In this document: positions 9,474-63,739 of the stretch, piece after piece
How the letters are laid out: each line of letters opens with the position of its first letter
How positions within the stretch are numbered: position 1 is the first letter of the stretch
NCBI RefSeq assembly: GCF_006345805.1
Contig: NC_043001.1
Location: 60,016,001 to 60,080,000 of the forward strand
Length of the DNA: 64,000 nucleotides
Source: Octopus sinensis
Taxonomy: Eukaryota
Direction: 5' to 3'
Position numbers and translations under genes: made by a program
The notes under the pieces: generated by a model
The model's input: the letters and a program-made list of their open reading frames with translations, nothing else
Database searches by the model: none
Told to the model about the DNA's origin: nothing

Positions 9474-9522
9474 ATATATACATATATATATATATATATA
9501 CTTATTGGTCCTAGGCTATATA

Positions 9523-9576
<54 letters not shown>

Positions 9577-9589
9577 GGATATATATATA

Positions 9590-9655
<66 letters not shown>

Positions 9656-9720
9656 ATATACATACATATATATATATGCATATACGTATATATATGTATA
9701 TATGTATATATGTATATATG

Positions 9721-9765
<45 letters not shown>

Positions 9766-9774
9766 ACACATGTA

Positions 9775-9825
<51 letters not shown>

Positions 9826-14269: not shown

Positions 14270-15329
14270 CAGTAGTTTTATTTTTATAACGTGCTTTCAC
14301 TTCACAACCGAGCGCAGCTCTGTGTGCCTTGATGGTTACTGTGATGCTCTGATGGTTACTGTATTGAAAGTGTTCTGCGTAGGATGTGAGCAGTGCCCAG
14401 TAGTGCAATTTTCTGTATGTTACATGTATTTGTAAGCCCTGGTATTTTTGTTATGTATTTGTCTGAAAATTTTTATCATGCCTAATGCGCCTACTATGAT
14501 AGGAATTGTTTCTGTTTTTAGATTCCACATTCGGGTTACCTCTATTTCCAGGTCTTTGTATTTTGAAAGTTTCTCCATTTCTTTTAGAAACACGTTGTCA
14601 TCTGCTGGTATTGATACATCAATTAGAAAGTTTTTTTTTTCTTCATGATCTCTGACAATTATATCTGGTCTGTTGACCTTAATTTCTCTATCTGTGTGTA
14701 TCGGCATATCCCAGGGTATGGTTGCTTTCTCGTTTTCTGTGACCTTTTCTGGTGTGTGACTATACCATCTTTTTTCTGTTGTTATTCCATAATGTTGGTA
14801 TAGCTTCCAGTGTATGTAGGTCCCAACTCTGTCGTGTCTGTGAATATATTCCTTCTTAGCTAGGACTGGGCAGCCAGAGATAATACGATTTATTGTTTCT
14901 TGTCCATCTCCACATATTCTGCAGTTACTTGATATATTTCTTTTCATTACATGTTTTTGTAATTCCTGGGGTGGGGAGGCTTTGGTCTTGTGCTGCAATT
15001 AAAAATCCTTCTGTCTCTGCTTTCAGTCCTGAGCTTCTCAACCACAGCTGGGATTTTTCTTTGTCTATTTCTTTTGCATTTAGTTTAGTCCAGTACTTGC
15101 CATGAAGGGGCTTTTCTTGCCATCGTTTTATCATGGTCCGTTGCTGTTCTAGTTTTAGTTTGGATTTCATTTGCTTTATAATTTTGTTGTGTCTTCTTCT
15201 TTTTCTTCTTCTTCTTCTTCTTCTTCTTCTTCTTCTTCTTCCTTCCTTCTTCTTCTTCTTCTTCTTCTTCTTCTTTCTTCTTCTTCTTTTCTTCTTCTCT
15301 CTTCTTCTCCTTCTTCTTCTTCTTCTTTC

Positions 15330-15360
<31 letters not shown>

Positions 15361-18300
15361 TTCTTCTTCTTCTTCTTCTTCTTCTTGGTTCATATTTGGA
15401 GAGGTGGCTTAGATTTCTTGTTTGTATTTGTAAGCTTCCTTAAATACTGAGAATAATTTTTTGTTTTGTTAGTGTTTTGCCGCTATATGTATCAGTTTTT
15501 CTTGCTTCTGAAGTAGGTATTTTGCAGTCCTATGGTGGTTATTTTATAGTAGTGTTCCAGCTTTATAGGCCTCTAACACCTTCTATACGTTGTATATATA
15601 GTCTTTCTATGTCAGATTTTGGGTCATGCATCCTAGATCCTGTCATTATTTTTTCTTGTTTTCCTATCTATTTTGGTTAGTTCATTTAGCATCCAGTTAA
15701 GGATATTGTAGTTGTAACTTATAACAGGGACGGGTAAAGTGTTAATACCTATTATCTTGTTTTTAGCATTGAGCTCTGTTTTTAATATTGATTTAACTCG
15801 TCTATAGTATTTTTCTTTATTTTCTCTTTCATTTGTGTGTGTTGTGTCTTATCTAGTTCATGGATTGCTAAGTATTTGTAAGTTTGTCTTTGGTGTAATT
15901 CTCTTATTTCATTGGCTTTATCTAGTGTGATGTTGCTACTCTTAACTAGTTTTCCTCTTTTCAGGGTTACTTTGGCGCATTTTTCTAATCCAAATTTCAT
16001 ATCTATTTCTCTGGTGAATCCATGAACTGTCTTTAATAGTGTTTCCAGCTGTTTGTCATTTGCAGCGAATAGTTTTAGGTCATCCATATATAAAATATGG
16101 CTGATCGTTTTGCCGTAACATTTATATCGCATCCAGTTCTATTTAGCATATCAGATAGAGGTTACAGTTCCAACCAGAAAAGGAGTGGAGAGAGCGTGTC
16201 TCCCTGGAATATTCCTCTTCTAATGGGGATGCCTTTGGTTTTCATGAGTCCCTCTTTTGTTTGGAGGTGTAGGACTGTTTGCCATTTATTCATAGAGTGC
16301 TCTATGAATTTTATGATTGTTGGTGCTACTTTGTTAATGGCTAGTGTTTCGAGGATCCATGTGTGGGGGATGCTATCAAACGCCTTTCGGTTGTCGATCC
16401 AGGCCATACTGAGGCCTCTAATCATTCTGTGGCTATCTTCCGTTATGGCTTTATTGATCATTAGTTGATCTTTACAGCCATATGAGCCTCTGCGGCACCC
16501 CTTCTGCTCTTCTGGAAACAGGTTGTTTTCGTCCAGGTGCTTGTTCAATCTTTGTGATATTACTGCAGCGAATGCTTTGTACATTGTAGGGAAACAAGTT
16601 ATAGGTCTGTAGGTTTCTGGTTTTGCTGTCTCATTGGTTTTGGGTATTAAGAAGTTTTCCCCTTCGTGAGACATTCAGGCATTGTCTCTGGCTCTGCCAG
16701 TATGTTGTTAAGGTTTTCAGCCAGCCTTTTCTGCATTCCAGTCAGATATTTCAACCAGAAGTTGGGGATCTCGTCATGCCCAGGTGCTTTCCAGTTGCTT
16801 AGTCGTTGCAGTGCCTGGGTGACCTCTTCAGTTGTTATGGGGGTCCAAAGTTGCACAGATGCTAAGTTTGTTGTTTTAATACTTCTTTTTTTGGTTGTTC
16901 ATTCGCCGACCATATTTCCTTCCAGAATTCTTCCACTTCTTCTGCCGTTGGTGCTGCAGTGATTTCTATTTTATGTTTGCCAAGTTCTTGGTAAAACTTT
17001 TTGGGGTTGGAGTTGAACTGTTTGTTTTGTTCAAAGAAGCGTTGGCGTTTCTCATACCGGCGGATCCTTTGCGCTTTGGCAAGGATATCTTGCTTTAGCT
17101 TTTCTCTTATCTCAGGTAAAACTTTTTCTGTGATGTTGTATTTGCACAGTATTTTTGTTTTCTCTTTGTTGCTTAGTAGCGTTGATTGTCTACTGATTTC
17201 ATTAAAAATCGACAGATCTTTTCTCATTTTTTGTATTTTTTTGGATGTTATTTATCCACAGGTTTTGTTTGGGTAGTGGTACTCCTGCTTGGATGGGTTT
17301 GAGGGAGTATCCAGCTTCTTTTGTGGCTGCAGTCATTTAGCTCAGTGATATCGCTATTTGTTTCGGTGGCTATTAGTTCTGCGACGGCTAGGTTTATGCG
17401 CTTACAATTGTTGTTTTTTTTTGTCTATTTTGATTTTTGGGATGTATGGTCGGTGGTCCATTTTGAGATCTGTGTTTTTCGGATCTTTGATTATTCTACT
17501 TTTTATAGTATCATAATCATTAGGTTTCCCTTCGTTATTTCCAGGTTTTAGTTTTGTGTCACTTTCTTTCTCATTCGTATGTTTGTCTGTCGTGTTTTGG
17601 CTTGCTGCTTGTCGTGCATTATTATGCATCCTTACGGTCTGGGTTTGTTGTTTTTTGTTTACATCGTTTTTGTTGGAAATGTTACGTTTGTCTTCGTGTT
17701 TTACTATCTCAGAGTTTATATTATTTGGCATTATTGTGTGGCTTCTATCTATATTTTCCTGATGTATTTTTTCTTTTAAATGTTCTATTTCTATTTCTGA
17801 TATTTTTTTGTGTTGAGAATATATCTGTGTACGTTAGCTAGTTTATTAGAGTTCATTGCTGTATCCAAGTCTTTATTTATGATATTTTTCTTCCATATTT
17901 TATATGTATATGTTGTGTTTTCGTTCTTTGGGTAGAGCACTGCTGTAAAGTAAGCGTGTAGGATAGAAATGTATTCCTCACGTGTCCATTTATGCCTTTT
18001 TGGTTTTATTTGCGGGACATGAGGAGCAGCATCCGGTCCATTATTTTGACGGTCGTCATTTTCGTAGGGTACCGGTCCGTTCATTTCTGTTGTCACATTG
18101 CTTTGCACGTGTAATTTTTCGTACCTTTTGCGTAACAGGTTCAAAGCACGTACTTCCCGATTGTTATTCTTGGGTTGAATAATACCGGTATTATCTAATT
18201 TATTCGTAGTCGTTTTGTACATGGTGTTTGGGACCGGAGATGATCTGTTGTTGATGGATCGTAATTATCAATCATGTTTACATGGTTGGAGAGGATATCG

Positions 18301-18537: not shown

Positions 18538-19649
18538 TTTTTTTTCTTCTTTCAAATTTGCTTCCATTTCTTGCCGAGTGTCTTCCCGACTCCTAGGGCA
18601 AAGAAACTCATAGTATACATTGGTAGGCCATTAAACCAAACTCAATAGTTCGTTAATTTTTTTTTTTTTTAAGTTAAATTAAAATACATGAGCAGCAACA
18701 GTTCTCACATCGAAAATGCTCTTCTCAATACGTGTGATGTACCAGTTAAGACAATTTTTTGTACTTCTTGCAGGGATGGTAAGCCAGGGATCATTCTCAT
18801 ATAATTTTCGGTTCCCTTCTTGATCATTCCTAGTGCTCCTACGATCACTGGTATTGTAACCGCCTTGAGATGCCACATTTTCTCAATTTCAATGAGCAAG
18901 TCTTTATATTTTCTGAGCTTGTCAAACTCTTTCGCTGAGATATTATGATCACAGGGGATGCTCATGTCGATCAATAAGCAAACTTTATTGTTTTGGTCTT
19001 TCACAACAATATCTGGTTTATTGGCCTTGATGGTTCGGTCTGTATGTACTGGAAAGTCCCACAGAATGGTTACATTTTCTCCTCCAGTTACAGCCTCAGG
19101 GTGGTGATTATACCACTTGTCGGCAGTTTTGATATTGTAATACCGACTTATTAGCCGGTGGAGATATTGGCCAACTCTGTCATGTCTTAATTTATACTCC
19201 ACTGGTGCTAAGACTTTACATCCAGCGATTAGGTGGTCCACTGTTTCAATCATATCATTGCAGAATCGGCATTTTGGGTCCGCTCCATTTTTCATCACAT
19301 TGGCCTGGTAGTTCCGGGTTAATAGGCTTTGATCTTGAGCAGCCAGGATGAAACCTTCGCTCTCTGCTTTTAGCCCTGAGCTCCGTAGCCACTGATGGGT
19401 TTGCTTCTGGTCAACATCAGCTTGTTTGCTGCGGGTCACATATTTGCCGTGCAGAGGTTTCTCCTCCCACCTATCAGCCAATTGCTCGTGCGCTTTTTTC
19501 ATTGCCATCATTTTCACCTTCTTTGCAACAATAGTTGCCGTACTTCCCTCGGGTTGTTCAGTTTGGGTATCCTGCACGAGATCAATAGCAAATCTTTTGC
19601 TTTCCTTTATGATAGAATGGAGCTTCTTTCGTCTCTCGTGATTTTCCAC
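18537..19649 (-). mobile_element. 5'-truncated R4/Dong retrotransposon, family gamma (copy E) with intact 314-aa C-terminal ORF
   Basis: ORF 18705-19649: CRFCNDMIETVDHLIAGC...HD and KPDIVV...LIDMSIP...K..KY. (AAT)n on both sides. Confidence 0.92.
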
Positions 19650-19920: not shown

Positions 19921-21216
19921 TCGAAAACTGTTGACAATGCATTGAGTGCACCACCCTAAGGCAGATATAGATCGATTTTATCTACGAAGAAAGGAGGGAG
20001 GCCGTGTGCTTTTGCAACTGGCAATAACAATGAAGGTTGCTACAATTGGCCTAGACACCTACCTGAAAAACTCCGAGGACTGGATGTTAAAACTTGTCTC
20101 AAAACATGAAGACAAGAAAGCATCATACTCAGTAAAAAAACAGGCAAAGGAATATCTAAGTGAATTCCGATTACAACAAATTCCGGAATTAGACACACAA
20201 GAAATAAGCACAGAAAAAGCTAAGCGCATGAAAACCCGTGCTAAAACTGCTGCCTTAGATATTCTGAATGTTAACTGGCAAGAAAAACCTCTCAATGGCA
20301 AATACCCAAAGAGAGCAAATAATGCAGATGTTGACAAAGCCCCGACCCATCAAAGGCTAATGGCCTCTGGCTTAAAATCTGAAACAGAAGGGTTTATCAT
20401 AGCAGCTCAAGATCAATTCCTACCTACAAGGAACTACCAGACAAACATACTAAAGAACGGCAGTAGCCCAACATGTTGTGTATGTCAACAACAAAATGAA
20501 ACCATTGATCATGTTGTCTCCAAGTGCAATCTTCTTGCGCCTACAGAGTATCTCAACAGGCATGATAGAGCTGCACAATATATTCACTGGGTAATTTGCA
20601 GAAGCCTGGACTTGCCCCATGATAAAAACTGGTGGGAACGCAAACCACCTCCAATGCTTGAAAATGACCACATCTCACTCCTCTGGAACTTCACCATTCA
20701 AATTGACAGAAAGATAGACGCGAATAGGCCAGATATCATAGTAAAAGACATCAGACAAATGACATGCCTCCTCATTGACATGACTGTCCCAATCGATATA
20801 AACGTATCTGTCACGACCTGACATTAAGATATGGAAATAGAAATCAGCAAAATGTGGAACCTGAAGAGTAAAACAATACCTGTTTTCATAGGTGCCCTGG
20901 GATTGATAGCAAAGGGGCTGAATTCTACCTAACTCAGATACCAGGAAACCCCAAAATAGCAGACATCCAAAAGGTAGTCCTCATGGGAACTGCTCATATC
21001 CTACGCAAAATACTTTCTTTGTAATCTCAAGTTTTAAAACAAACATAATTTTCGTAGGGTTTTTTAGACATTCACTTGTACAACACTAAGTACAAAACCA
21101 AATATATGGCACCATAGGCATAACACCAACATGAACTTCCAACTTGTTGTCTCTTGAGGTCTCTGGGTGAGACTTGGAGCTAGCTTGTGCAAATGTGAAG
21201 CAAAAGTCAAACATAG
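19921..21216 (+). mobile_element. 5'-truncated Dong family beta (copy B2) with 291-aa ORF
   Basis: Colinear with about 5459-6765; knuckle and RLE present; ends CATAG|AATAAT. Confidence 0.92.
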
Positions 21217-21702: not shown

Positions 21703-21766
21703 GCAATGGAGTCATATTGCTGACGAGTCCCAATTATAGGACGAAATCGCAGTCCATTATTCTTGC
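21703..21766 (+). ncRNA. Type I hammerhead ribozyme motif
   Basis: ATATTG-CTGACGA-GTCC/CAATTATA/GGAC-GAAA-TCGCA-GTC-CATTAT; predicted cut after 21754. Confidence 0.7.
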
Positions 21767-22856: not shown

Positions 22857-24690
22857 TATGGCTTTCCAGCCCCCGTTATCGAGTATGGCCATTGCACGAA
22901 GCTTAACTGTTACTGGTGCTGTGATCGAATGTGACTTTTTAGTCCAGCTATGTCTTGTACAGAATTGGCAACTAAAACCTTTACCGGTAATAGCCGGCTG
23001 TAGTTGTAACTGGGCTTCATGTATCTTTGCATGTCGTTTAAGTCCTCCTGCCGAATTACACTCTCTTCCACATGCCCGATAGATAAGATTAGTATGGTGT
23101 GTTACACAACCACCAGTGGCCAGGTTGTCACTCATCTGTCTCGCTTTATGACTACGAAGATGACTCTTGAGTCCAGCTTTACTGAGGCACAGACATAGCA
23201 TGTCAGCATCAAAAGAAGACCCTTTCCATCTGGAAATGTAACAGCGATGCCCTTCCTGACATCCCTCCTTACTTTCTCATGTGCAACTCGAGATTTCTCA
23301 AAAGTGGCTGTCCCCTCGTGCACAAACCTTCTCCACCTGCTACGATCAATAGCTATGCCTTCCCATGTGTCAGGAGAGATGCAAGCATCTCTTAAGGAAG
23401 CCTTCAGCAAGTCCTTATACCTCTTTTTTGGTTTATGTGGAGGTCGTTCTCCTTTAGCTAACTCTCCATAAAAGAGTTGTTTTGGCATCTTGAATCCTTC
23501 ATCCTGACCAGATGACCACTCCATCTGAGCCTTTACTTTAACACAAGAGCTTCTATACTTTCACACCGAGAGCCTTCCAATATTTCAAGATCACTGATGC
23601 GGGGTCCTTACACTTAATGCCATAGATCCGTCTGAGGCACATCTGATGGAAACGTTCCAGTTGTTTAAGGTGGTATCGATATGTGACCCACGTCTCGCAG
23701 GCATAGACAAGAGAAGGGAGCACACATGCCTTGTACACCTTTATCTTCGTCTTTCTGCGTATGTCTCGCCGATTCCAGAGGCGCTTTTCTAGCCTTCCGA
23801 AAGCAACATTTGCTTTCCTAATTCTATATGGAATTTCATCATCCAATTTGCTATATCTATTAATAGTGCTTCCCAGGTAGACAAACTGATCAACTAAATC
23901 AAGTCGTTTACCATACAAATAGATATTTGGTACACTATACTGCTTACCAGGGGCAGGTTGATGCATGACAATAATTCTCTTGAGATTGACTGTCAATCCT
24001 AAGGCAGTGCAAGCATCAGAGAATGCATTCAAAATGTGTTGCATATCAATCTCTGTGTGGGCTACTAGCTCACAATCATCTGCATACAAAAGATCTCTTA
24101 TGATAGAGGTAAATACCTTTGTTTTTGCAGCAAGGCGCCTGATATTAAATATGCTGCCAGAGGTTCGATAATGGACATAAACACCGTATCTGCAGTTTCT
24201 GAATGCAATACAGAACACCATCGCAAAGTATATGGAAATAGGGTCGGTGCCAGAATATCCCCCCGTTTCACTCCATTTTGTATTGAAATGGACTCCGACA
24301 TTTTCCCTCTAACATTCACCCTACCATTCATGTCTTCATGGAAAGGCCTAACCAAAGCAAGGAACTTTTCAGGATACCCAAATTTCTGGAGGACTTTCCA
24401 CAATGCTTTTCTATTGACAGTATCAAAGACTCTTGTCAGATCGAGACCCTGTTCCACACACTTCTGAAGCTGTCTTGCTGAAAAGATCATATCAGCAGTG
24501 CCACGTCCCAAACGAAAGCCAGATTGACTTTGGGGAAGAACACAATCTGCAATGTATTTCAGCAGACGATCCAGAAGTATCCTGCATAAAACCTTTCCTA
24601 CGGCAGACAGCAATGATACTCCCCTATAATTACCACGATCATTCCTGTTGCCCTTTCCCTTATACAGGACCACCATTATTGCATCTCTCG
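22857..24690 (-). mobile_element. 5'-truncated RTE (BovB-like) LINE with C-terminal C2H2 fingers, frameshifted
   Basis: LYKGKG..NYRGVSLLS..QSGFR..FDTVNR..GVKRGDILAPTLF; LLYADD; PKQLFYGEL; GLKSHLRSH and CGRECNSAGGLKRHAKIH. Confidence 0.92.
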
Positions 24691-24911
24691 TACATACATA
24701 CATACAATACATACAATACATACATACATATATATGTTTACAATATATGCATGCATACACATATGAGTGTATAGTACCGAACATTTATATATGTGAAATA
24801 TTGAACGAAGCGTTCAAAAGAGTCTTAAGAACCCTTTTAGGACACAAGAAAGGGAAAAAATCAGTAGGGTTTCTTTTTCCAATACACCCGTAACCAGGGA
24901 ATTTCAGATAA

Positions 24912-26062: not shown

Positions 26063-26433
26063 TCTAGGCCCCGAAATATTTTGGGGAAGGGGCCAGTCGA
26101 TTATATCGACCCCAGCACGCAACTGTACTTAACTTATCGACCCCGAAAGGATGAACGGAATAGTCGACCTCGGCGGAATTTGAACTCAGAACGTAAATAC
26201 CTATTTCTTTACTACCCACAAGGGACTAAACAGAGAGGGGACGAACAAGGACAGGCAAAGGGATTAAGTCGATTATATCGACACCAGTGCGTTACTGGTA
26301 CTTATTTAATCGACCCCGAAAGAATGAAAGGCAAAGTCGACATCGGTGGACTTTGAACTCATAACGTAGCGGCAGACGAAATACCACTAAGCATTTCGCC
26401 CTGCGTGCTAATGCTTCTGCCAGCTTGCTGCCT
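26063..26433 (-). mobile_element. Two tandem tRNA-SINE units with Nin/Deu-like central domain
   Basis: Reverse complement contains GAGTTCAAA B-box and GCCTTTCATTCTTTCGGGGTCGATTAAATAAGTACCAGT; about 100 bp is duplicated (26095-26175 vs 26266-26360). Confidence 0.75.
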
Positions 26434-29068: not shown

Positions 29069-29333
29069 GAGAGAGAGAGGGGTATGAGAGATAATGGTGT
29101 CAATAAGACCCAAAGGTGTCAGTTATTACTCACAAAGTATTGGAAACTTATTTGTATACCATTCTGCCTATATAATGGATCTACAGTGGCAACATCCCTG
29201 CATATCTCAGGGCTATTTTCAGTCCTCTAATTCACTCCGTATTTCATATCTTATCTAAAATAACTATTGCTTAACAATTTTCTCAACCGTCTCGGATGAA
29301 AGGATTTTTATCTCTTTCTGAAAATATATATAT

Positions 29334-29364
<31 letters not shown>

Positions 29365-29367
29365 GCA

Positions 29368-29485
<118 letters not shown>

Positions 29486-29499
29486 CATACATACAAGCA

Positions 29500-29533
<34 letters not shown>

Positions 29534-29579
29534 GTATATATGCATACATATATACATGCATACATATATATATATATCA

Positions 29580-29984: not shown

Positions 29985-31274
29985 CGGGGGGCGTTCAATA
30001 AGTAATGCACCTGACCCACTTCCTATTGCAGTAGAGCAACGACACTTGGCACAGTTATTAGTCTTCTTCTACATAGGAACCACCCAGAGTTACGCATTTC
30101 TCCCATTGTTTGATGAAGCTCTGGAGACCGTTTTTGTAGAAGGCCCCAGCTTGGTCCTCCAACCTGAACGCGACTTCAGAAATCAAGGCTGCATCATCTG
30201 GGAAACACTTTCCTTTCAGAAACAACTTCATGACTGGGAAGAGGTGAAAATTAAAGGGTGCAAGGTCAGGAAAGTAGGGGGATGGGGGAGGAGTTCATAG
30301 CCATACGCCTGTGCTTCTGATCTGGCGACAAGCGAGTTGTGGACTGGAGCGTTGTCCTGCAGGAGGAGATGCCTTTGCTGATCTTGCCCCGCCTCTGGAT
30401 TTTGATAACTTCTCTTAATTTCCTCAAAAGTGAAGCATAATAGGCTCCTGCAATTGTGGTACCCTTTGCCAGGAAATCTGTCATCACTACTCCGTCCTTG
30501 TCCCAGAAGACTGTGAGCATGACCTTGCCAGCGGAGGGCTGCACCCTTGCCTTTTTTGGAGGGGGTGAGTCACGGTGCTTCCACTGCATTGACTGGGCTT
30601 TGGTCTCTGGATCATCGTGATGGAGCCAGGTTTCATCCTGTGTAATCAGTCTTTTGAAAAATTTTGACTCATCTTCTTGGCACATCTCCAAATTCACCCT
30701 CGAGCACTCGACGCGTTCTTGCTTCTGGAAAGGCGTGAGCAACCTGGGAATCCATCTGGCAGACACCTTTTGCATATGCAAATGGTCATGAATGATAGTT
30801 TCCACTGACCCGGTACTAATCTTGACCTCATGGGCTATTTGGCGAATAGTTATGCGTCGATCTTCCAAAATGGCAGCCTCAACTTGACGGACAGATGCCT
30901 CATCAATGGCAGAAGGGGGCGACCAGATCTGGGAGGTGTTTCCACAGAGTTCCGACCATGTTTGAATTCACGATGCCAGCGTTTTACAAGGTTATATGGT
31001 GGGGCATCATCACCATAAGTTACTTTCATTTCATCAAAAGTCTCCCGTGGTGTGCGTCCTTTCAAATACAAAAACCGGATCAATGCTCGACACTCAACAG
31101 GCTCCATTTCACACTTGACTCGGTTCAAACACCTGTAAATCAGAAACCACAATTGATTCAGAGCTGTAATTTACCACTTACTCTATACAGATATAAATGA
31201 TTGCACATGCAAAATTTCAGCTAGATCAAACAACTGCAAGTGGGTCAGAGGCATTACTTATTGAACGTCCCTCG
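29985..31274 (-). mobile_element. Full-length mariner (DD34D), copy 1; transposase 30058-31107 frameshifted
   Basis: 1290 bp, approximately 35-bp imperfect TIRs, TA TSD; WIPRLL, ITQDETW, QDNAP and SPDLAP-type motifs. Confidence 0.95.
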
Positions 31275-35889: not shown

Positions 35890-36560
35890 TTGACTATGGT
35901 CTACGACTGGTTGTCATGTGTTCTGGTAGTAGGCGGATCCAACACATCGAGATTGTCGTGCGTGACCTGTTCAATACCGTATACATCGTCGGTACATGGA
36001 GTGCTTGTGGTGGTTTACAAAAGCCATTAGTACCTGTGCCCACACCCTGAGGAAAGCTGCCTCCAGTTCCACACGAGTAGTCGGCCACCTTGTTTAGCTG
36101 CCTCTGGATTTCGCCCCACAGGTGTTTAGTTGGGTTCGAATCCAGGCTGAGAGCCGGCCACGGCATGCTTCTTATGTTATGATGACGCTGGAAGTCCAAG
36201 GTGACCCTGGTCATCTGGGAAGGAGCATTGTTGATGCCGCTAATGTCGGTACTGCGTAGCCCCTGTAGTCGTGCCTGACGGTGGCGGGCGGTGAGGGCAG
36301 GCTCACGAGCTGGACGGCGGCAACGAAGTTTGTTGGCAGCCAGTCGACATTGTAACGTGTCGTCGCTGATGGGTTGCTGTCCAGTAGCTGGGGTGCCCTC
36401 TGCAGTGCTGTTGGTGTTGTATCGCAGCTGCAGGGGATAGACGGTGCTGACATGGACATTGTAAACTTTCGCACCAACCAGGGTAGGCTGCCCTGCTTGC
36501 ATTCATTCGATAGCTTGTTCTCTCTGTGCTGCTAACAATAGGGTCCAAGTCAGGAATGCC
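35890..36560 (-). mobile_element. Internally deleted Tc1-like transposase relic
   Basis: HTH region (MQAGQP..NVHVSTVY), RRPAR.P.LTARHRQARL, NNAP, MPWPALS.D.NP..HLWG. Ends not resolved. Confidence 0.8.
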
Positions 36561-36839
36561 AGGAACTCAGTTCAAGTTGATTATTATACCTGTAACCTCC
36601 ACAAGATGCACGTGCATTTTCGTTTTCATGACAATTGTTTGCGACTGTTACCCATGGCATTCGACGCAACTGCGTTTTTGCGTCCCGTTTTTAGGAAAGT
36701 TGAAAGCTTACCTACAATTGGGGTCTCAGTCATAAACCAGCATATTTTGCAATATTTACACTTGCATCCTCGAAATAAGTTCTTTGAATTTACCGTATAA
36801 AAGTGACATTTGAAAAAATCACATTCCTTTTAAGGCTCA

Positions 36840-36870
<31 letters not shown>

Positions 36871-36871
<1 letters not shown>

Positions 36872-37282
36872 TCTTTTACTTGTTTCAGTCATTTGACTGC
36901 GGCCATGCTGGAGCACCGCCTTTAATCGAGCAACTCGACCCCGGGACTTATTCTTTTGTAAGCCCAGTACTTATTCTATCGGTCTCTTTTTGCCGAACCG
37001 CTAAGTAACGGGGACATAAACACACCATCATCGGTTGTCAAGCAATGCTAGGGGGACAAACACAGACACACAAACACACACACGCATATATATATATATA
37101 CATATATATACATATATACGACGGGCTTTCAGTTTCCGTCTACCAAATCCACTCACAAGGCTTTGGTCGGCCCGAGGCTATAGTAGAAGACACTTGCCCA
37201 AGGTGCCACGCAGTGGGACTGAACCCGGAACCATGTGGTTGGTAAACGAGCTACTTACAACACAGACACCCCTGCGCCTATA
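36871..37282 (-). mobile_element. Full-length abundant tRNA-SINE with internal (CA)/(TA) tract and (AAAGAGTA) tail
   Basis: Same consensus at 38764, 51672, 60630, 62322 and 63506; B-box GGTTCAGTCCC. Confidence 0.9.
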
Positions 37283-37304
37283 GCCACTCCTGCGCCAATA
37301 AACA

Positions 37305-37561
37305 TTAGATTGGTGTTCAGTTGTATCGAACGGGCTGCTAACCGACAACTATTCACAGGCGCGATCCCACTACTGCTCGACACGGGGCCTCCTTAGACAA
37401 CCTGGTCCTGATGAGCTCCCTCTCCAGCACCATATTGATGCCGAGCTTAGGGCGGACACCTGATCGCCATAGAAGACCGACTACCAGGATTCCATCCTCA
37501 AACCGGCCAACCAACCAAGCCTCCGAGTAGCTAGATTACAGGAGCACGCCACAACTCCAAC
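37305..37561 (-). pseudogene. RN7SL: 7SL (SRP) RNA copy lacking helix 8 (about 40-nt deletion at 37387/37388)
   Basis: Reverse complement has CTATGGCGATCAGGTGTCCGCCCTAAGCTCGGCATCAATATGGTG, helix 6 with GGAG tetraloop, ACCAGGTTGTCTAAGGAGG, then CCCCGTG..CAGTAGTGGGATCGCGCCTGTGAATAG, all colinear with metazoan 7SL as recalled. Confidence 0.92.
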
Positions 37562-38616
37562 TCCCCATATATATATATATATCAACGAAAAAAAAATCCA
37601 GGGAAATCCGTGAGATTAGAGTCCGTATACCCAGTGGTAATCTGTCTGTAGCTGAAGAGATGTGCAGAAGGTTCAGGACGTAGTTGAGATATGCAGGTCC
37701 AATAAGTAGGATGTTAAAGCAGGATAAAACTGGAGTGACCACTGAGCGTATATGTAGATGATATTTATATAAAATGAACAAGTAGGTGTATTAGATTGAC
37801 ACTCGGTAAAATGAAAGACAAAAAGTATTTTACGTTTCGAGGCTACACTCTTCAAAAGAAAGAATAAGAGAAAAATACAGATTGAGAATGAAAAAAAAAC
37901 CTGTAGATTTATCGGTCAAGCTTGGCGACTGACTAGAAAATGTGTTTGAAAGAAGAGGTTGGAAGAAAGGGACGTAATAAAGCGACGTTGACTCACATCC
38001 AAAGGTGTGCTTGCGTGAGTGTGTGTATATGTGAGAATGGTGTGTATGAATGTGCAAGTGTGCGTGTGTGAATAGGGCCAGTGATTTGTTAAGTCTTTGG
38101 CAAGTCTGCGTGTGTAAGTGTGTGTGTTCATGTTTGTGTGTAAGCGTCTGTAACGTGTGGGTGCTTATATAGTGGTATGTATGGTGACGTTATTGAATAT
38201 CGTGAGCTGGTGTGGGTGGGTGGATGATTATGTGTGTTGTGGGTGCAGGGAAGTGGTTAGTGCTAGTGTGTGTAGTGGTGTGGTGTGAAGTGTTAGGTGA
38301 TGGTGGGTGGCGGTGTGGGGTGGTAAAGTAGGGGTGAGGGTGAATGGTAGTTAATAAGGAAGAGAGGAGTTAGGCAGGAGTGAAGTAACTTTCACAAGAC
38401 TTTAATGCATCTGGGTGTGTGTGTGTGTACGTGTGTGCGTGTGTCCGTGGTTATGGGTATAGGTGTGGAAAGAATGTCCCAATTTCAGAGTTAATGTTTC
38501 GAGATATGCTGAAGATTTTCTATTTTGGATATAGTTGGGCTACATAGGTCTGCTCAGGACTTAGTGTCCGCTTTTTCCATGGGTATGAGTAAGTATTTCA
38601 TTTATGTCTTACGTAT

Positions 38617-56830: not shown

Positions 56831-59303
56831 TGAGTTTATGTTTAACCCAAACTCCACCATTTGACCCCTTCTAAAAATTTATTTATATAACATACCGTTT
56901 GACCCCTTCTAAAAATTGCCGATCCTGTGCTTATATCATAAATTTCCATTATAATCAATGCAGTCTAATAATATAAAAACAACTCCTACATTTCGACTAT
57001 TATATTATGGAATACTGCTATACTCCTTACGTTCAAGTAAACCTCATTTTCCTATATATGCCTGCCAATCAAAAACAAAAATGCTCCTCAAGGTAAAACT
57101 GCAATTGATGAAATCTCGTGCGTACTTTAGGAAACAAAGAACTATCAAACTTAGCACGTAAAAGGTAAAGATCTGCACTTAAGAAGCCTGTCGAAATTAT
57201 TTAAGGCTTCTCTGCTGCGGAGTTCGGATGATCATGGAGATACTGGATTAGTAATGTCAACATTAATTTACAATAACAACCTTCCCATGTCAAAAAAATT
57301 AACTGCAATCCTGGATCAAGAATTGAACAGCTCGAAAAATTGCTTCCTGTTTTTGCAATTAAAGCAACAACAAAGAAATTTAGGAAGGATGTTTCAACTT
57401 GACTGCCTGTGTTCACTTCAGGAAATTTCAAACACAAAGCATCCCAAATGGGACTAGTATGAAAATGGATCTGAACAACTTCAAAATGAATAAAATTACT
57501 AAGACGAGGGCATAAACTCATAAGCAGAATATTGGATGAACAGATGGTAGTGGAAATGTAGATAGGGCCAAAAGAGAAATATTTACATACAAACAAGAAA
57601 CTCACGTCCTTCACCCCACCGCTCGAACCAAAGGAGTTGAAGAAACAGGAAAGACGATTTAATGAACTCTGAATGCAAAACCATCTATTTATACTAGTAC
57701 TCCAAAAGTTACAAGAGTCTGACAGTGAAGCATATATGGTGTCAACATCAGTGTGTATTATCATACCAAATCTCAAATATCTCAAATTAAGACTATTTAA
57801 GATTATTTAATATGGCTATCCTTTGGATTACATAGACATATTAACTCTATTGATATACTCATAAACCCGGCCTTTAACAAGTATTGAGGTTAATAACTGA
57901 TCGATTAGAATTTCTAAAATATCTCTTGGACGAAAGCAGCAATCACTTTCCTTTTTTCTGATATCATAGTAAATCTCGACGCTAGGATCCCACCAAAATA
58001 CTGAATAGAATACTTACAACTGTAGTTTTAAAAGTTCCTATACAGCATATCTGAACGAATTGAGAAAATATTCATCATTGAGAGAATAAAATTCCTCTTG
58101 TAAATTATCTTTACCAGTTCTAAAGACAACTAAATATTATTGGCACTGCAATGTCACAAAATGTCACAAAAGTAGCTCGCACGTCTGCTAATCATGTCAT
58201 GGCATTCTTAAAAGTCCAAAGATAGAAACACTTCAGATTAACATTCCATAAATACTTACTCTCCAACTTGCCGAAAACCCTACTTCGCTGGTTATTTCAT
58301 TCTACACACACACAGACACACACACACACACACACAGAGCTGATCAACTCTTTGAGTTGAAAAGTCTAGTTAATAAAATAGACCACACTATTCAACATAC
58401 AATGGAATATAGTAAGATTCAAGTATCTATTTTAAACATGTTAATTTCAAAAAGAGACACACACACTGAAAAGCAACATGTAACTAAAGTAGCCAAGACT
58501 TTTGATAAGAAACAGCGTCGAGGGAAAAGCAACTGACCGGATCACGGAAAAACTACAGGAGACCAAAACAGTTAAGCGAATGATGTTCTCAGACTACCAA
58601 TCAAACGGGATTCCGGACTATTGCCGAAAAAAGAACAAGGGACAAATCATAGAATAAACATAGTTGATTTGAAGGCAGTCAGCCAAGCAGAACGCTATGA
58701 CACTCACGGACACTAGTGATGTCTTTCAGAAGGTAACCAATCAAGTCTTTAATTTATGCCTTAAAACACTGAATATAGAGCAGATGATGGGGATACCCCT
58801 TCATACGAGATGACAAAATTTATAATTTGTTTTTACTTTTTAAAATACCTAACTTATCTAATTTCTAAAACAAATTATTTCGTTGAAATTTATTGACACT
58901 TCTACTTTCCCTCGTGTTTTTATCGTTATGAAGTTTATCGTACATTTGGACTTTAATCTTTGCTATTATTGTGAAACGTACTGAATACTTGGATATTCGG
59001 TCGTGTAATTTTCCTATGAAACACATTCAACATTTCATTTTCTTGAGCATGTTTTATCAATACGAAACTTACTACTGTGCATTTACATTATTTTAATCTT
59101 TTATCCCCTTCTACATTTAGTATTGAAACAAAAATATGAAAGAAGTGTAAATGGTATCTTAAAAAAATGTTTTAAAAATACTAAAACAACTAAAACTATT
59201 TTTAAGACCAGGTGCAATTTCAACTCCATAACCAGTAATCTTATTCATATATATATATATACATTTATATATATGTCTGTGGGGTGGATATATATATATG
59301 TAT

Positions 59304-59392
<89 letters not shown>

Positions 59393-60142: not shown

Positions 60143-60205
<63 letters not shown>

Positions 60206-60451
60206 GCACACACACATATGTATTTATCATTTATCCTTTTGGTCTCCAAACATTTGATAAGCGATTCCATATATGCGTTCCTTGAAGGTATAGACTGTAT
60301 TATGAATAAACAATGTTAGGGTTTTTCGACTAAATATATCCACGCACCTTCAAGGAACGCATATATGGAATCACTTATCAAATGTTTAGAGGTGTGGTGT
60401 TAAATATAAAGTCCTTGACTCGAATTTGATGTTTTTCTCTGATCAATGTAT

Positions 60452-60499
<48 letters not shown>

Positions 60500-60561
60500 A
60501 TATATATATAATATATATATATATATAATATATATATATATTATATATACGTATATATATA

Positions 60562-60629
<68 letters not shown>

Positions 60630-60631
<2 letters not shown>

Positions 60632-60790
60632 CGACAGGCTTCTTTCAGTTTCCGTCTACCAAATCCACTCACAATGCATTGGTCGGCCCGGGGCTATAGC
60701 AGAAGACACTTGCCCAAGATGCCACGCAGTGGGACTGAACCCGGAACCATGTGGTTGGTTAGCAAGCTACTTACCACACAGCCACTCCTG
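60630..60790 (-). mobile_element. 5' half of tRNA-SINE inside (TA)n
   Basis: Nearly identical to 62581-62741. Confidence 0.88.
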
Positions 60791-60792
60791 TA

Positions 60793-60868
<76 letters not shown>

Positions 60869-61293
60869 ATTATATAATATATATAGATATATATATATAT
60901 ATATATACATATATATAATATATATATATAATTTGATGTTTGTTCTCTGATCAGTGTATTATATACATATATATATATATACCGAATACTGCTATACATA
61001 TATATATATACATACCGAATACTGCTTGGTCGAATTGATTAACAATTAATTAATTCTACCCCTTTTTTACTGACAATATAATGCTTTCTCTCCAAGAATT
61101 TGAACTACAGTTTTTGCCTCTGTAGGAATGTACTACTCTATGACTCACGTGGGTGGACAGGGAGAATAATAGATCTCATTTGTATTTTTGGATTCGCTAG
61201 TACTGGTTGTCTGGCATGGTTTGTCCGATGTTACAGATATCGGACGGGTATGTTTGATTCTTAGTATTTTCAAATCTAAATCGGAAGAAATAT

Positions 61294-61689: not shown

Positions 61690-62029
61690 TATAATACATT
61701 GATCAGAGAACAAAGATCAAATTCGAGTCAACGACTGTATATTTAACACCACACCACTAAACATTTGATAAGTGATTCCATATATGCGTTCCTTGAAGGT
61801 GCGGGATATTTTTAGTCGAAAAACCCTAACATTGTTTATTCATAATGCAGTTTACTTTTATATGTATAGTTTTACCCTTACGGGCTATCTTTTACTGGAA
61901 AGCAATACTTTCGTATTGCATTATTATTTTCATTGAAACTTCTTCACTGTTATCGTTCTGTTAACGTTTTGGCGTTCCGACGAGTGTACTGGTATAGATG
62001 TGGCAACATTTGAAATATTGTTTAGGTAT

Positions 62030-62100
62030 ATGCAGCTGATGAAGACAAATCACATCTACGTTGTCAAACGTATTTGAAGAGTCTGAAACCGGTCCTGCAT
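62030..62100 (+). ncRNA. Canonical type I minimal hammerhead with extended helix II
   Basis: ATGCAG-CTGATGA-AGAC...GTCT-GAA-ACCGGT-C-CTGCAT; predicted cut after 62094. Confidence 0.85.
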
Positions 62101-62286
62101 TATCCGATTCTAAGTTTTCCATTTTTCAGATGTTCTTCGTAGAGGTAAGACAAATTTTTTTCATGTTTGTGGCACACACGCGTCTTTGCTAGTATTTACG
62201 CAGTGAAGCTATACAATAGCGTCGTATTTATTACGATTGCTATTTTCCAGTAAATATCGGTGCCTTGTTGTACCATTTATTTACTT

Positions 62287-63505: not shown

Positions 63506-63670
63506 TAAGGAGCAGGCGAGGCTATGCGGTAAGAAACTTGCTTTCAAACCACTTAATTCCGGGGTCAGCCCCACTGCGTGACACCATTGGCAGGTGTCTT
63601 CTACTGTAGCTTCAAGCAGACCGAAGCCTTCTGAGTGGATCTGGCAGGCGGAAACTGAAAGAAGCCTGTC
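63506..63670 (+). mobile_element. Older 5' half of the tRNA-SINE
   Basis: GGTGTCTTCTACTGTAGC..GCCTTCTGAGTGGATCTGGCAGGCGGAAACTGAAAGAAGCCTGTC. Confidence 0.75.
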
Positions 63671-63739
63671 ATATATACAAAAACATGGTGACGCAAAAAG
63701 AATAGAACTCATAAATCTTTGAATAAAACTGTTTGAATA

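What the first reader, a model, noticed from the sequence alone, without database searches (positions are those of the whole stretch)
37305..37561. 7SL RNA with a precise helix-8 deletion (Alu-like step)
Seen: the Alu domain, helix 5 pairing and helix 6 with GGAG loop are retained, while AAGGAGG joins directly to CCCCGTG, removing about 40 nt. Known: helix 8 binds SRP54, helix 6 binds SRP19, and Alu/B1 arose by S-domain deletion. Inferred: RT skipped a stem-loop; if expressed, the RNA could bind SRP9/14 but not SRP54. The ORF track gives no hint of this feature.
Basis: partly seen in the sequence, partly recalled or inferred. Interest (0 to 1): 0.75.

Follow-up and report, generated by a model that had tools for sequence, protein, structure and literature searches.

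The report
Octopus 7SL pseudogene fused to SINE
An octopus-type copy of the signal-recognition-particle RNA gene has lost exactly the hairpin that binds the key SRP protein and sits head-to-tail on a common mobile element, so it is most likely a dead by-product of reverse transcription, of modest interest as a snapshot of how Alu-like elements can begin.

Summary
On the minus strand, 37561..37305 is a full-length match to metazoan SRP (7SL) RNA (Rfam RF00017, 165.9 bits, E 2.5e-43). The Alu domain, helix 5 and helix 6 (GGAG loop) are kept. 39-40 nt of helix 8 are missing at AAGGAGG|CCCCGTG (37388|37387).

An Octopus bimaculoides ORF called across a 7SL gene carries exactly 13 extra codons at this point. 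So octopus 7SL normally has helix 8, and this copy lost it. The two end points are neighbours across the base of the hairpin.

Four to eight bases after the 7SL end, in the same orientation, begins a full-length tRNA-derived octopus SINE. Its first 18 nt are present twice. No T4 terminator lies between the two parts, and (TA)n tracts flank the whole block.

My best reading (about 0.55) is a one-off chimeric retrocopy: a LINE reverse transcriptase copied a SINE RNA, jumped to 7SL RNA and skipped helix 8. The main rival is a DNA-level 7SL pseudogene that a SINE later hit.

There is one copy in the window. Genome-wide copy number and expression could not be tested, because no tool here holds an octopus genome. 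Treat it as an ordinary pseudogene until more copies are shown.

The parts
37567..37582 (.). (TA)8 tract directly upstream of the block. It is a candidate 5' copy of a TA-rich target-site duplication, or alternatively a chance microsatellite or a TATA-like element.
   Evidence: Sequence. About 3% of window positions have such a tract within 10 nt on a given side.
37562..37566 (-). GGGGA between the TA tract and 7SL position 1. It is filler or flank of unknown origin.
   Evidence: Sequence. It lies outside the Rfam match.
37305..37561 (-). 7SL (SRP RNA)-derived sequence, 257 nt, full length at both ends and lacking helix 8.
   Evidence: Rfam RF00017, 165.9 bits, E 2.5e-43, model 1-299. It is the only copy in the window.
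37519..37561 (-). 5' Alu domain (helices 2-4, UGUAAU turn, loops GUGGCG and AGCUACUC).
   Evidence: Matches the upper-case consensus positions in the cmscan alignment.
37398..37438 (-). Helix 6 with its GGAG tetraloop (loop at 37420-37415).
   Evidence: cmscan alignment. It is also recovered by the unconstrained fold. Coordinates.
37381..37394 (-). Deletion junction AAGGAGG|CCCCGTG (between 37388 and 37387). Only AGG+C+CCC of the 46-nt helix 8 remains.
   Evidence: The 39-nt gap is seen against L001 and against the O. bimaculoides ORF P0001.
37297..37304 (-). TGTTTATT linker. There is no T4 terminator (TAAT GTTTA where the intact comparator has TTTT GTTTA). The last four bases may already belong to the duplicated SINE head.
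37283..37300 (-). Extra copy of the first ~18 nt of the SINE (TATTGGCGCAGGAGTGGC).
   Evidence: Alignment of SINE 5' ends. It matches the SINE consensus head at 17 of 18 positions.
36871..37282 (-). Full-length tRNA-derived octopod SINE (head TATAGGCGCAGG..., B-box-like GGTTCCGGGTTCAGTCC, internal (TA)n(TG)n, tail GTAAAAGAG), in the same orientation as the 7SL.
   Evidence: 94.5% and 92.6% identical to copies at 39176-38771 and 62749-62335. About 1.7% private differences. 3' ends aligned.
36841..36870 (.). (TA)15 tract after the SINE tail, a candidate 3' copy of the target-site duplication.
   Evidence: Other copies of this SINE have duplications that start TAT.
36813..36818 (-). First run of four or more T on the minus strand downstream of the 7SL start (T6). 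This is where a Pol III transcript that begins in the 7SL would be expected to stop.

Best explanation
The block 37566..36871 (minus strand) is a single chimeric retrocopy, and it is non-functional.

Inferred sequence of events:
1. A LINE reverse transcriptase primed on a nicked TA-rich target and copied an abundant tRNA-derived SINE RNA to its 5' end.
2. It re-copied the first ~18 nt of a SINE RNA.
3. It jumped to the U-rich 3' end of a 7SL RNA and copied it to nucleotide 1.
4. While on 7SL it crossed the base of the helix-8 hairpin instead of unwinding it, at a 1-3 nt AG/G microhomology, and so lost 39 nt.

Shown: the anatomy, the exact position of the deletion relative to the hairpin, the existence of intact helix 8 in an octopus 7SL, and the lack of a T4 terminator.

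Inferred: the order of events and the enzyme.

The product cannot serve as SRP RNA, because the SRP54 site (helix 8) is gone. Its Alu domain and helix 6 would still be able to bind SRP9/14 and SRP19 if it were ever transcribed.
For: 1. The 7SL part is full length, model positions 1-299. This is the hallmark of the 5' part of template-switch chimeras (PMC2104539).
2. A full-length SINE follows in the same orientation, 4-8 nt after the 7SL end. With about 6 copies of this SINE in 64 kb, the chance of such a neighbour is roughly 0.001-0.005 (my estimate).
3. The SINE's first ~18 nt are doubled at the joint, as expected from a second jump. Double jumps are documented (PMC2104539).
4. The SINE alone has no TA-type duplication on its 5' side, while (TA)n flanks the whole block. 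Other copies of the SINE have duplications that begin TAT.
5. The deletion end points are neighbours across the base of helix 8.
6. The ages agree. The SINE has about 1.7% private changes. The 7SL has about 2-4 private changes in the 141 nt comparable with the O. bimaculoides ORF.
7. RTE-type LINEs are active in octopus (PMC9115989). A 7SL plus tRNA-SINE chimera made by an RTE-type LINE is the proposed origin of the hagfish 7SL SINE (PMC7245038).
Against: The flanking repeats are TA microsatellites, which are common here (3% of positions) and cannot prove a target-site duplication.

The six bases after the Rfam end (TGTTTA) equal those after the terminator of the intact comparator L001. This hints that genomic 3' flank, not only RNA, was copied.

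No orthologous empty site and no second copy could be examined. Replication slippage on DNA gives the same hairpin deletion.

The 3' part is not 5'-truncated, unlike most mammalian chimeras.
Confidence: 0.55

Rival explanations
1. A DNA-level 7SL gene copy (a member of a small gene family) died in place. Replication slippage across the helix-8 hairpin removed 39 nt, the T4 terminator mutated to TAAT, and a SINE later landed by chance or by target preference just downstream.
For: TGTTTA follows the 7SL end both here and in the intact gene of L001. A TA-rich stretch upstream could be a TATA-like promoter element. TSD-like matches for the SINE alone (TTTATT against TATATA) cannot be excluded. Multi-copy 7SL genes are common in animals (general knowledge).
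Against: It needs a coincidence of about 0.001-0.005 for a same-orientation, full-length SINE 5' end within a few bases. It does not explain the doubled SINE head. The upstream 150 nt show no significant similarity to the upstream region of the intact comparator (99 of 1000 shuffles score as well), although that comparator is another species.
Confidence: 0.25
2. It is one member of an amplifying octopod element with a 7SL head and the SINE as body and tail. It would be transcribed by Pol III from the 7SL promoter through to the T6 at 36818-36813. That would make it a SINE1-like family in a mollusc.
For: No T4 lies between the 7SL and the SINE tail. The Alu domain, thought to aid SINE1 spread, is intact. 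The architecture equals the precursor proposed for the hagfish SINE1 (PMC7245038).
Against: There is only one copy in 64 kb, while the plain SINE has about six, none with a 7SL head. No ORF carrying the junction exists among 5.8 billion clustered proteins, but a control shows this test is nearly blind to octopus repeats. No such family is reported. At about 700 nt it is long for a SINE.
Confidence: 0.1
3. It is an assembly or sequencing artefact. The hairpin was skipped by a polymerase during library preparation or collapsed in consensus, and the true locus has helix 8.
For: Strong hairpins can be skipped in vitro (general knowledge). Reads could not be inspected.
Against: The copy shows other private defects that mark a decaying pseudogene: a 1-nt deletion, about 9 broken pairs that are intact in L001, and no terminator. 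A clean 39-nt loss in a consensus of many reads is unusual.
Confidence: 0.04
4. It is an expressed, selected RNA. It would be an Alu-domain plus helix-6 RNA that titrates SRP9/14 or SRP19 without engaging SRP54, giving a regulatory or decoy function.
For: The Alu-domain consensus bases and the helix-6 tetraloop are preserved. 83 canonical pairs of the SRP fold remain.
Against: The SRP-like fold is weak: -69 kcal/mol against an MFE of -95, with an unremarkable z-score of -1.5. It has more broken pairs than the intact comparator. There is no terminator, and no conservation or expression data are available.
Confidence: 0.05

Closest known systems
Chimeric retrogenes / retro-pseudogenes made by LINE template switching (U6-L1, 7SL-containing chimeras in mammals; MINE and tripartite chimeras in Magnaporthe; PMC2104539)
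   Same: The 5' part is a full-length copy of an abundant small RNA, and the 3' part is a retroelement in the same orientation. They are directly joined. There are signs of more than one jump, and repeats flank the whole.
   Different: The host is a cephalopod, where the partner is probably a tail-specific (RTE-type) LINE rather than L1. The 3' part is a complete SINE, not a 5'-truncated LINE. The flanking repeats are microsatellite and not diagnostic. The 5' part carries an internal hairpin deletion.
SINE1 (7SL-derived SINEs: Alu, B1, tree-shrew Tu types, hagfish SINE1-1_EBu; PMC7245038, PMC13023118)
   Same: It has a 7SL head with an intact Alu domain. Like the hagfish element, it joins 7SL to a tRNA-SINE-derived body and tail. 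It also has an internal deletion within the S domain.
   Different: The deletion is 39 nt (helix 8 only), not about 155-183 nt, so helix 6 and most of helix 5 are kept. Only one copy has been seen, and there is no evidence of amplification.
Plain 7SL retrocopies / pseudogenes (for example P7SL_Cpo of guinea pig, discussed in PMC7245038)
   Same: It is a near-full-length 7SL sequence outside a functional gene context, and it is decaying.
   Different: It has no poly(A) tail. It is fused to a SINE and lacks helix 8.

Membership tests
Metazoan SRP (7SL) RNA, functional gene | Sequence and structure match to RF00017 above the gathering score | tested here: met
   165.9 bits against a gathering score of 70.
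Metazoan SRP (7SL) RNA, functional gene | Helix 8 with its loops and GNAR tetraloop (the SRP54 M-domain site) | tested here: not met
   40 model positions are absent and the remnant AGG-C-CCC cannot form a hairpin. Helix 8 is intact in L001 and in the O. bimaculoides ORF.
Metazoan SRP (7SL) RNA, functional gene | Pol III terminator (four or more T) at the 3' end | tested here: not met
   TAAT GTTTATT follows the 3' end. The first T-run of four or more is about 490 nt further on, at 36818-36813. L001 and L003 have TTTT / TTTTTT.
Chimeric retrocopy by template switching (criteria of PMC2104539) | (i) The 5' part is a full-length copy of a cellular RNA | tested here: met
   Model positions 1-299 are aligned and not truncated.
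Chimeric retrocopy by template switching (criteria of PMC2104539) | (ii, iii) The 3' part is a 5'-truncated retroelement copy, truncated at random sites | tested here: not met
   The SINE is complete from its TATAGGCGCAGG head. The jump would have been from the very 5' end.
Chimeric retrocopy by template switching (criteria of PMC2104539) | (iv) Parts directly joined in the same orientation | tested here: met
   Both are on the minus strand, with a 4-8 nt U/T-rich linker plus a doubled 18-nt SINE head.
Chimeric retrocopy by template switching (criteria of PMC2104539) | (v) The whole is flanked by short direct repeats | tested here: inconclusive
   (TA)8 and (TA)15 flank the block, but TA tracts are frequent. 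PMC2104539 notes the same problem for AT-rich sites.
SINE1 (7SL-derived SINE) | Head at least 60% identical to 7SL over at least 60 nt (SINEBase definition, PMC3531059) | tested here: met
SINE1 (7SL-derived SINE) | [quoted passage not shown] | not testable with these tools
   One copy in the window. No octopus genome is searchable here, and the proxy searches are blind to octopus repeats.
SINE1 (7SL-derived SINE) | Large central deletion of the S domain (~155-183 nt) | tested here: not met
   Only 39 nt are missing.
SINE1 (7SL-derived SINE) | 3' tail recognised by a partner LINE, or a poly(A) tail | tested here: inconclusive
   The attached SINE supplies a (GTAAAAGA)-type tail shared by other copies. 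The partner LINE was not identified.

The most novel reading that the evidence does not exclude
The locus is a member, or the founder, of an octopod retroposon family. Its head would be a nearly complete 7SL RNA lacking only helix 8, and its body and tail would be the common tRNA-derived SINE. That would be the first 7SL-derived SINE in an invertebrate, caught at the chimera stage with only part of the S domain deleted. This is the intermediate postulated but never observed for the hagfish element, and by analogy for Alu and B1.
Probability: 0.08. Interest if true: 0.75.

Novelty: new member of a known kind. Interest (0 to 1): 0.3.

Why it matters
If it is a one-off, it is a tidy natural example of two known behaviours of copying enzymes: jumping between RNA templates and skipping a stable hairpin. 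It comes from a cephalopod, a lineage where processed copies of small RNAs have not been described, and it changes nothing in our picture of SRP.

It would matter more if further copies exist. 7SL-derived mobile elements are known only from supraprimates and hagfish (PMC7245038, PMC13023118). An octopus family that still keeps helix 5 and helix 6 would show which parts of 7SL are shed first on the way to an Alu-like element. The question is cheap to settle with a genome-wide search.

Tried and rejected
1. Copy counting by proxy.
- I translated the frame across the junction and searched 5.8 billion protein clusters. This found no second deleted copy, but it did find an O. bimaculoides ORF with helix 8 intact and an intact 7SL in an unidentified animal.
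- The reverse-strand frame across the 7SL/SINE joint gave nothing.
- A control with an ORF from the very abundant SINE returned a single hit, from Argonauta hians. These negatives therefore say nothing about copy number.

2. Exact-pattern scans.
- Scans for the junction in the prokaryote genome collection and the viral collection found nothing, as expected.
- A scan for the conserved 3' strand in metagenome contigs found one truncated 7SL from another animal (L003).

3. Exact look-ups of contigs failed for P0001 and for a window ORF, so the species and the orthologous locus could not be fetched.

4. Promoter comparison. The 150 nt upstream of this copy and of L001 are not significantly similar. 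An apparent 16/25 match in the MAFFT alignment is therefore not evidence of a shared promoter.

5. Paralogous empty site. Both flanks are unique in the window.

6. Thermodynamic folding does not discriminate. Both this copy and the intact comparator have z-scores near -1.5 to -1.7.

7. I considered and rejected a new SINE inserted into an older SINE at position ~18. No remainder of an older SINE follows the 3' end.

Full report
**What is there**

cmscan against Rfam finds one match above threshold in the region: Metazoa_SRP (RF00017) on the minus strand, 37561..37305. It scores 165.9 bits, E 2.5e-43, with model positions 1-299 aligned end to end.

The alignment keeps the following elements:
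- helices 2-4 with the conserved UGUAAU turn and the loops GUGGCG and AGCUACUC (37561-37519);
- both strands of helix 5;
- helix 6 with a GGAG tetraloop (37438-37398).

Forty model positions inside helix 8 are replaced by a single base. AAGGAGG (37394-37388) runs straight into CCCCGTG (37387-37381). Only the strand (minus) went unstated.

**Is the gap a loss?**

I translated the frame that crosses the junction and searched the protein collection. Two spurious 'proteins' called across 7SL genes came back.

One is UniProt A0A0L8HPT1 of Octopus bimaculoides (P0001). It is 41/46 identical to the window's frame outside the gap. Between ...SKE and APCRAVVGSRL it carries 13 extra residues (GRFGPGRKRSRQK), which is 39 nt.

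The other (P0002) sits on two contigs, L001 and L002, from an unidentified animal. These contigs hold an intact 7SL scoring 270.3 bits. Aligned to it, the window lacks the same 39 nt.

This shows three things:
- the window is octopod DNA;
- octopod 7SL normally has helix 8;
- this copy lost it.

In the comparator numbering the deletion joins G176 to C216, and G176's partner in helix 8 is C217. The two break points therefore touch across the base of the 46-nt hairpin. A microhomology of 1-3 nt (G, or AG|G) is implied by the codons of P0001 and by the window sequence.

**State of the copy**

Of 108 modelled pairs, 23 are non-canonical or gapped here, against 19 of 120 in L001. About 13 of these are shared natural mismatches. 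About 9 are private to the window, against about 3 private to L001 outside helix 8.

There is a private 1-nt deletion (GGGA to GGA) and a private G-to-C change that breaks a pair.

The SRP-type fold still offers 83 canonical pairs but is weak: -69 kcal/mol against an MFE of -95. Unconstrained folding is uninformative for both this copy and the intact one.

Where L001 has CCTTTT GTTTA, the window has TCTAAT GTTTA. There is no T4 terminator. The first run of four or more T on this strand is at 36818-36813.

Without helix 8 and a terminator this is not a working SRP RNA gene.

Read on the minus strand, the order of elements is:
1. (TA)8 (37582-37567)
2. GGGGA
3. 7SL
4. TGTT
5. TATTGGCGCAGGAGTGGC
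6. TATAGGCGCAGGGG... and the rest of a ~410-nt tRNA-derived SINE, ending ...GTAAAAGAG (to 36871)
7. (TA)15 (36870-36841)

The same SINE occurs at 39176-38771, 62749-62335, 52008-51681, 60790-60600 and 63508-63677. None of these copies is preceded by 7SL.

Five copies share the head (T)ATAGGCGCAGG. The 18 nt before the SINE next to the 7SL are therefore a second copy of the SINE's own start, matching at 17 of 18 positions.

This SINE copy has about 1.7% private differences. That is similar to the 2-4 private changes seen in the 141 nt of 7SL that can be compared with P0001.

Other copies show target duplications that begin with TAT, for example TATGCCAAA / TATGCCGAAAA. Here a TA-type repeat is found after the SINE tail and before the 7SL, but not between the 7SL and the SINE.

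**Most likely mechanism**

The features of chimeric retrocopies made by LINE template switching are listed in PMC2104539:
- a full-length small RNA at the 5' end;
- a retroelement at the 3' end;
- the same orientation;
- a direct joint;
- flanking repeats.

Double jumps are documented in the same paper. The locus meets the first, third and fourth criteria. The fifth is inconclusive, because TA tracts cover 3% of neighbourhoods in this window. The usual 5' truncation of the 3' part is not met.

A same-orientation, full-length SINE start within a few bases of the 7SL end would happen by chance about 0.1-0.5% of the time, given six copies in 64 kb. That is my estimate.

I therefore favour a single event (confidence 0.55). 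The reverse transcriptase copies a SINE RNA, re-copies a SINE 5' end, jumps to the U-rich end of 7SL RNA, and runs to its first nucleotide while skipping the helix-8 hairpin.

RTE-type LINEs are active in octopus (PMC9115989). The same kind of chimera, 7SL plus a tRNA SINE made by an RTE-type LINE with an internal 7SL deletion before or after, is the published model for the birth of the hagfish 7SL SINE (PMC7245038).

**Rivals**

1. A DNA-level 7SL gene copy lost helix 8 by replication slippage and was later hit by a SINE (0.25). Its best support is the TGTTTA shared with L001 just past the 3' end. It must absorb the positional coincidence and does not explain the doubled SINE head.
2. A member of an amplifying 7SL-headed family (0.1).
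3. An assembly artefact (0.04). The other private defects of the copy argue against this.
4. A selected decoy RNA for SRP9/14 or SRP19 (0.05).

The upstream 150 nt are not significantly similar to those of L001 (99 of 1000 shuffles reach the same score). Because L001 is another species, this test is weak.

**What could not be done**

No tool here holds an octopus genome or its reads.

Searches for the junction in the prokaryote, viral and metagenome collections were empty or irrelevant.

The protein-collection proxy for copy number is nearly blind to octopus repeats. An ORF from the abundant SINE found only one Argonauta protein. The absence of further deleted copies is therefore not evidence.

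Flanks are unique within the window. Exact look-ups of contigs failed.

**Comparison with what is known, and verdict**

7SL-derived SINEs are reported only from supraprimates and hagfish, and all lost ~155-183 nt of the S domain (PMC7245038, PMC13023118). Literature searches found nothing for cephalopods.

This locus fails the large-deletion criterion. Its copy number is unknown, so I do not file it as a SINE1.

It is best filed as a new example, in a cephalopod, of a chimeric 7SL retro-pseudogene with a structure-guided internal deletion. The 'RT skipped a stem-loop' inference is plausible and now has contextual support. The 'Alu-like step' reading remains a minority possibility that one genome-wide search would settle.

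Interest is modest (0.3). It would rise sharply if further copies with different flanks are found.

Noticed in passing
window 21714-21760 (+): A type I hammerhead ribozyme motif lies above Rfam's gathering score (41.9 against 34 bits, E 2.7e-07), in a stretch rich in reverse-transcriptase ORF fragments (14.4-24.8 kb). It is possibly part of a Penelope-like element or a retrozyme.
   Followed up: partly
window 62018-62117 (+): A sub-threshold match to hammerhead HH9 (29.7 bits against a gathering score of 52, E 0.002).
   Followed up: no
window 30266-31152 (-) and 35894-36502 (-): Two decayed DNA-transposon relics. One is mariner-type (Pfam Transposase_1, E 3.7e-23). The other is Tc1-type (HTH_Tnp_Tc3_2, below the cut-off).
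   Followed up: partly
window 14420-16674 (-), 18705-19649 (-), 19946-20821 (+), 23553-24784 (-): ORF fragments with RVT_1 or zf-RVT matches, which are remains of non-LTR or Penelope-type retroelements. Two zf-RVT fragments face each other across long (TTA)n/(TTG)n tracts.
   Followed up: partly
window, 66 tracts (for example 9482-9819, 29324-29577, 59247-59388, 60183-60907): (TA)n of six or more repeats covers about 1.5 kb. Every sub-threshold Rfam 'miRNA' match (mir-297, mir-3149, mir-466, mir-1277) sits on such tracts and is a microsatellite artefact. Several tracts abut SINE 3' ends or lie inside SINEs.
   Followed up: partly
P0001 (UniProt A0A0L8HPT1_OCTBM); P0002 on L001 1387-1701 / L002 1122-1436: Database 'proteins' that are translations of SRP RNA genes, so they are annotation artefacts. 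L001/L002 carry an intact 298-nt 7SL (270 bits) from an unidentified animal, present in a JGI metagenome and in a Logan assembly.
   Followed up: yes
window 39176-38771 (-), 62749-62335 (-), 52008-51681 (-), 60790-60600 (-), 63508-63677 (+): Further copies of the same ~410-nt tRNA-derived SINE, with an internal (TA)n(TG)n microsatellite and a (GTAAAAGA)n tail. Target duplications begin with TAT. A related ORF exists in Argonauta hians (P0003).
   Followed up: partly
window 26125-26195 and 26298-26368 (+): Two 71-nt copies (85% identical, 173 nt apart) of another repeat that looks tRNA/SINE-derived.
   Followed up: no
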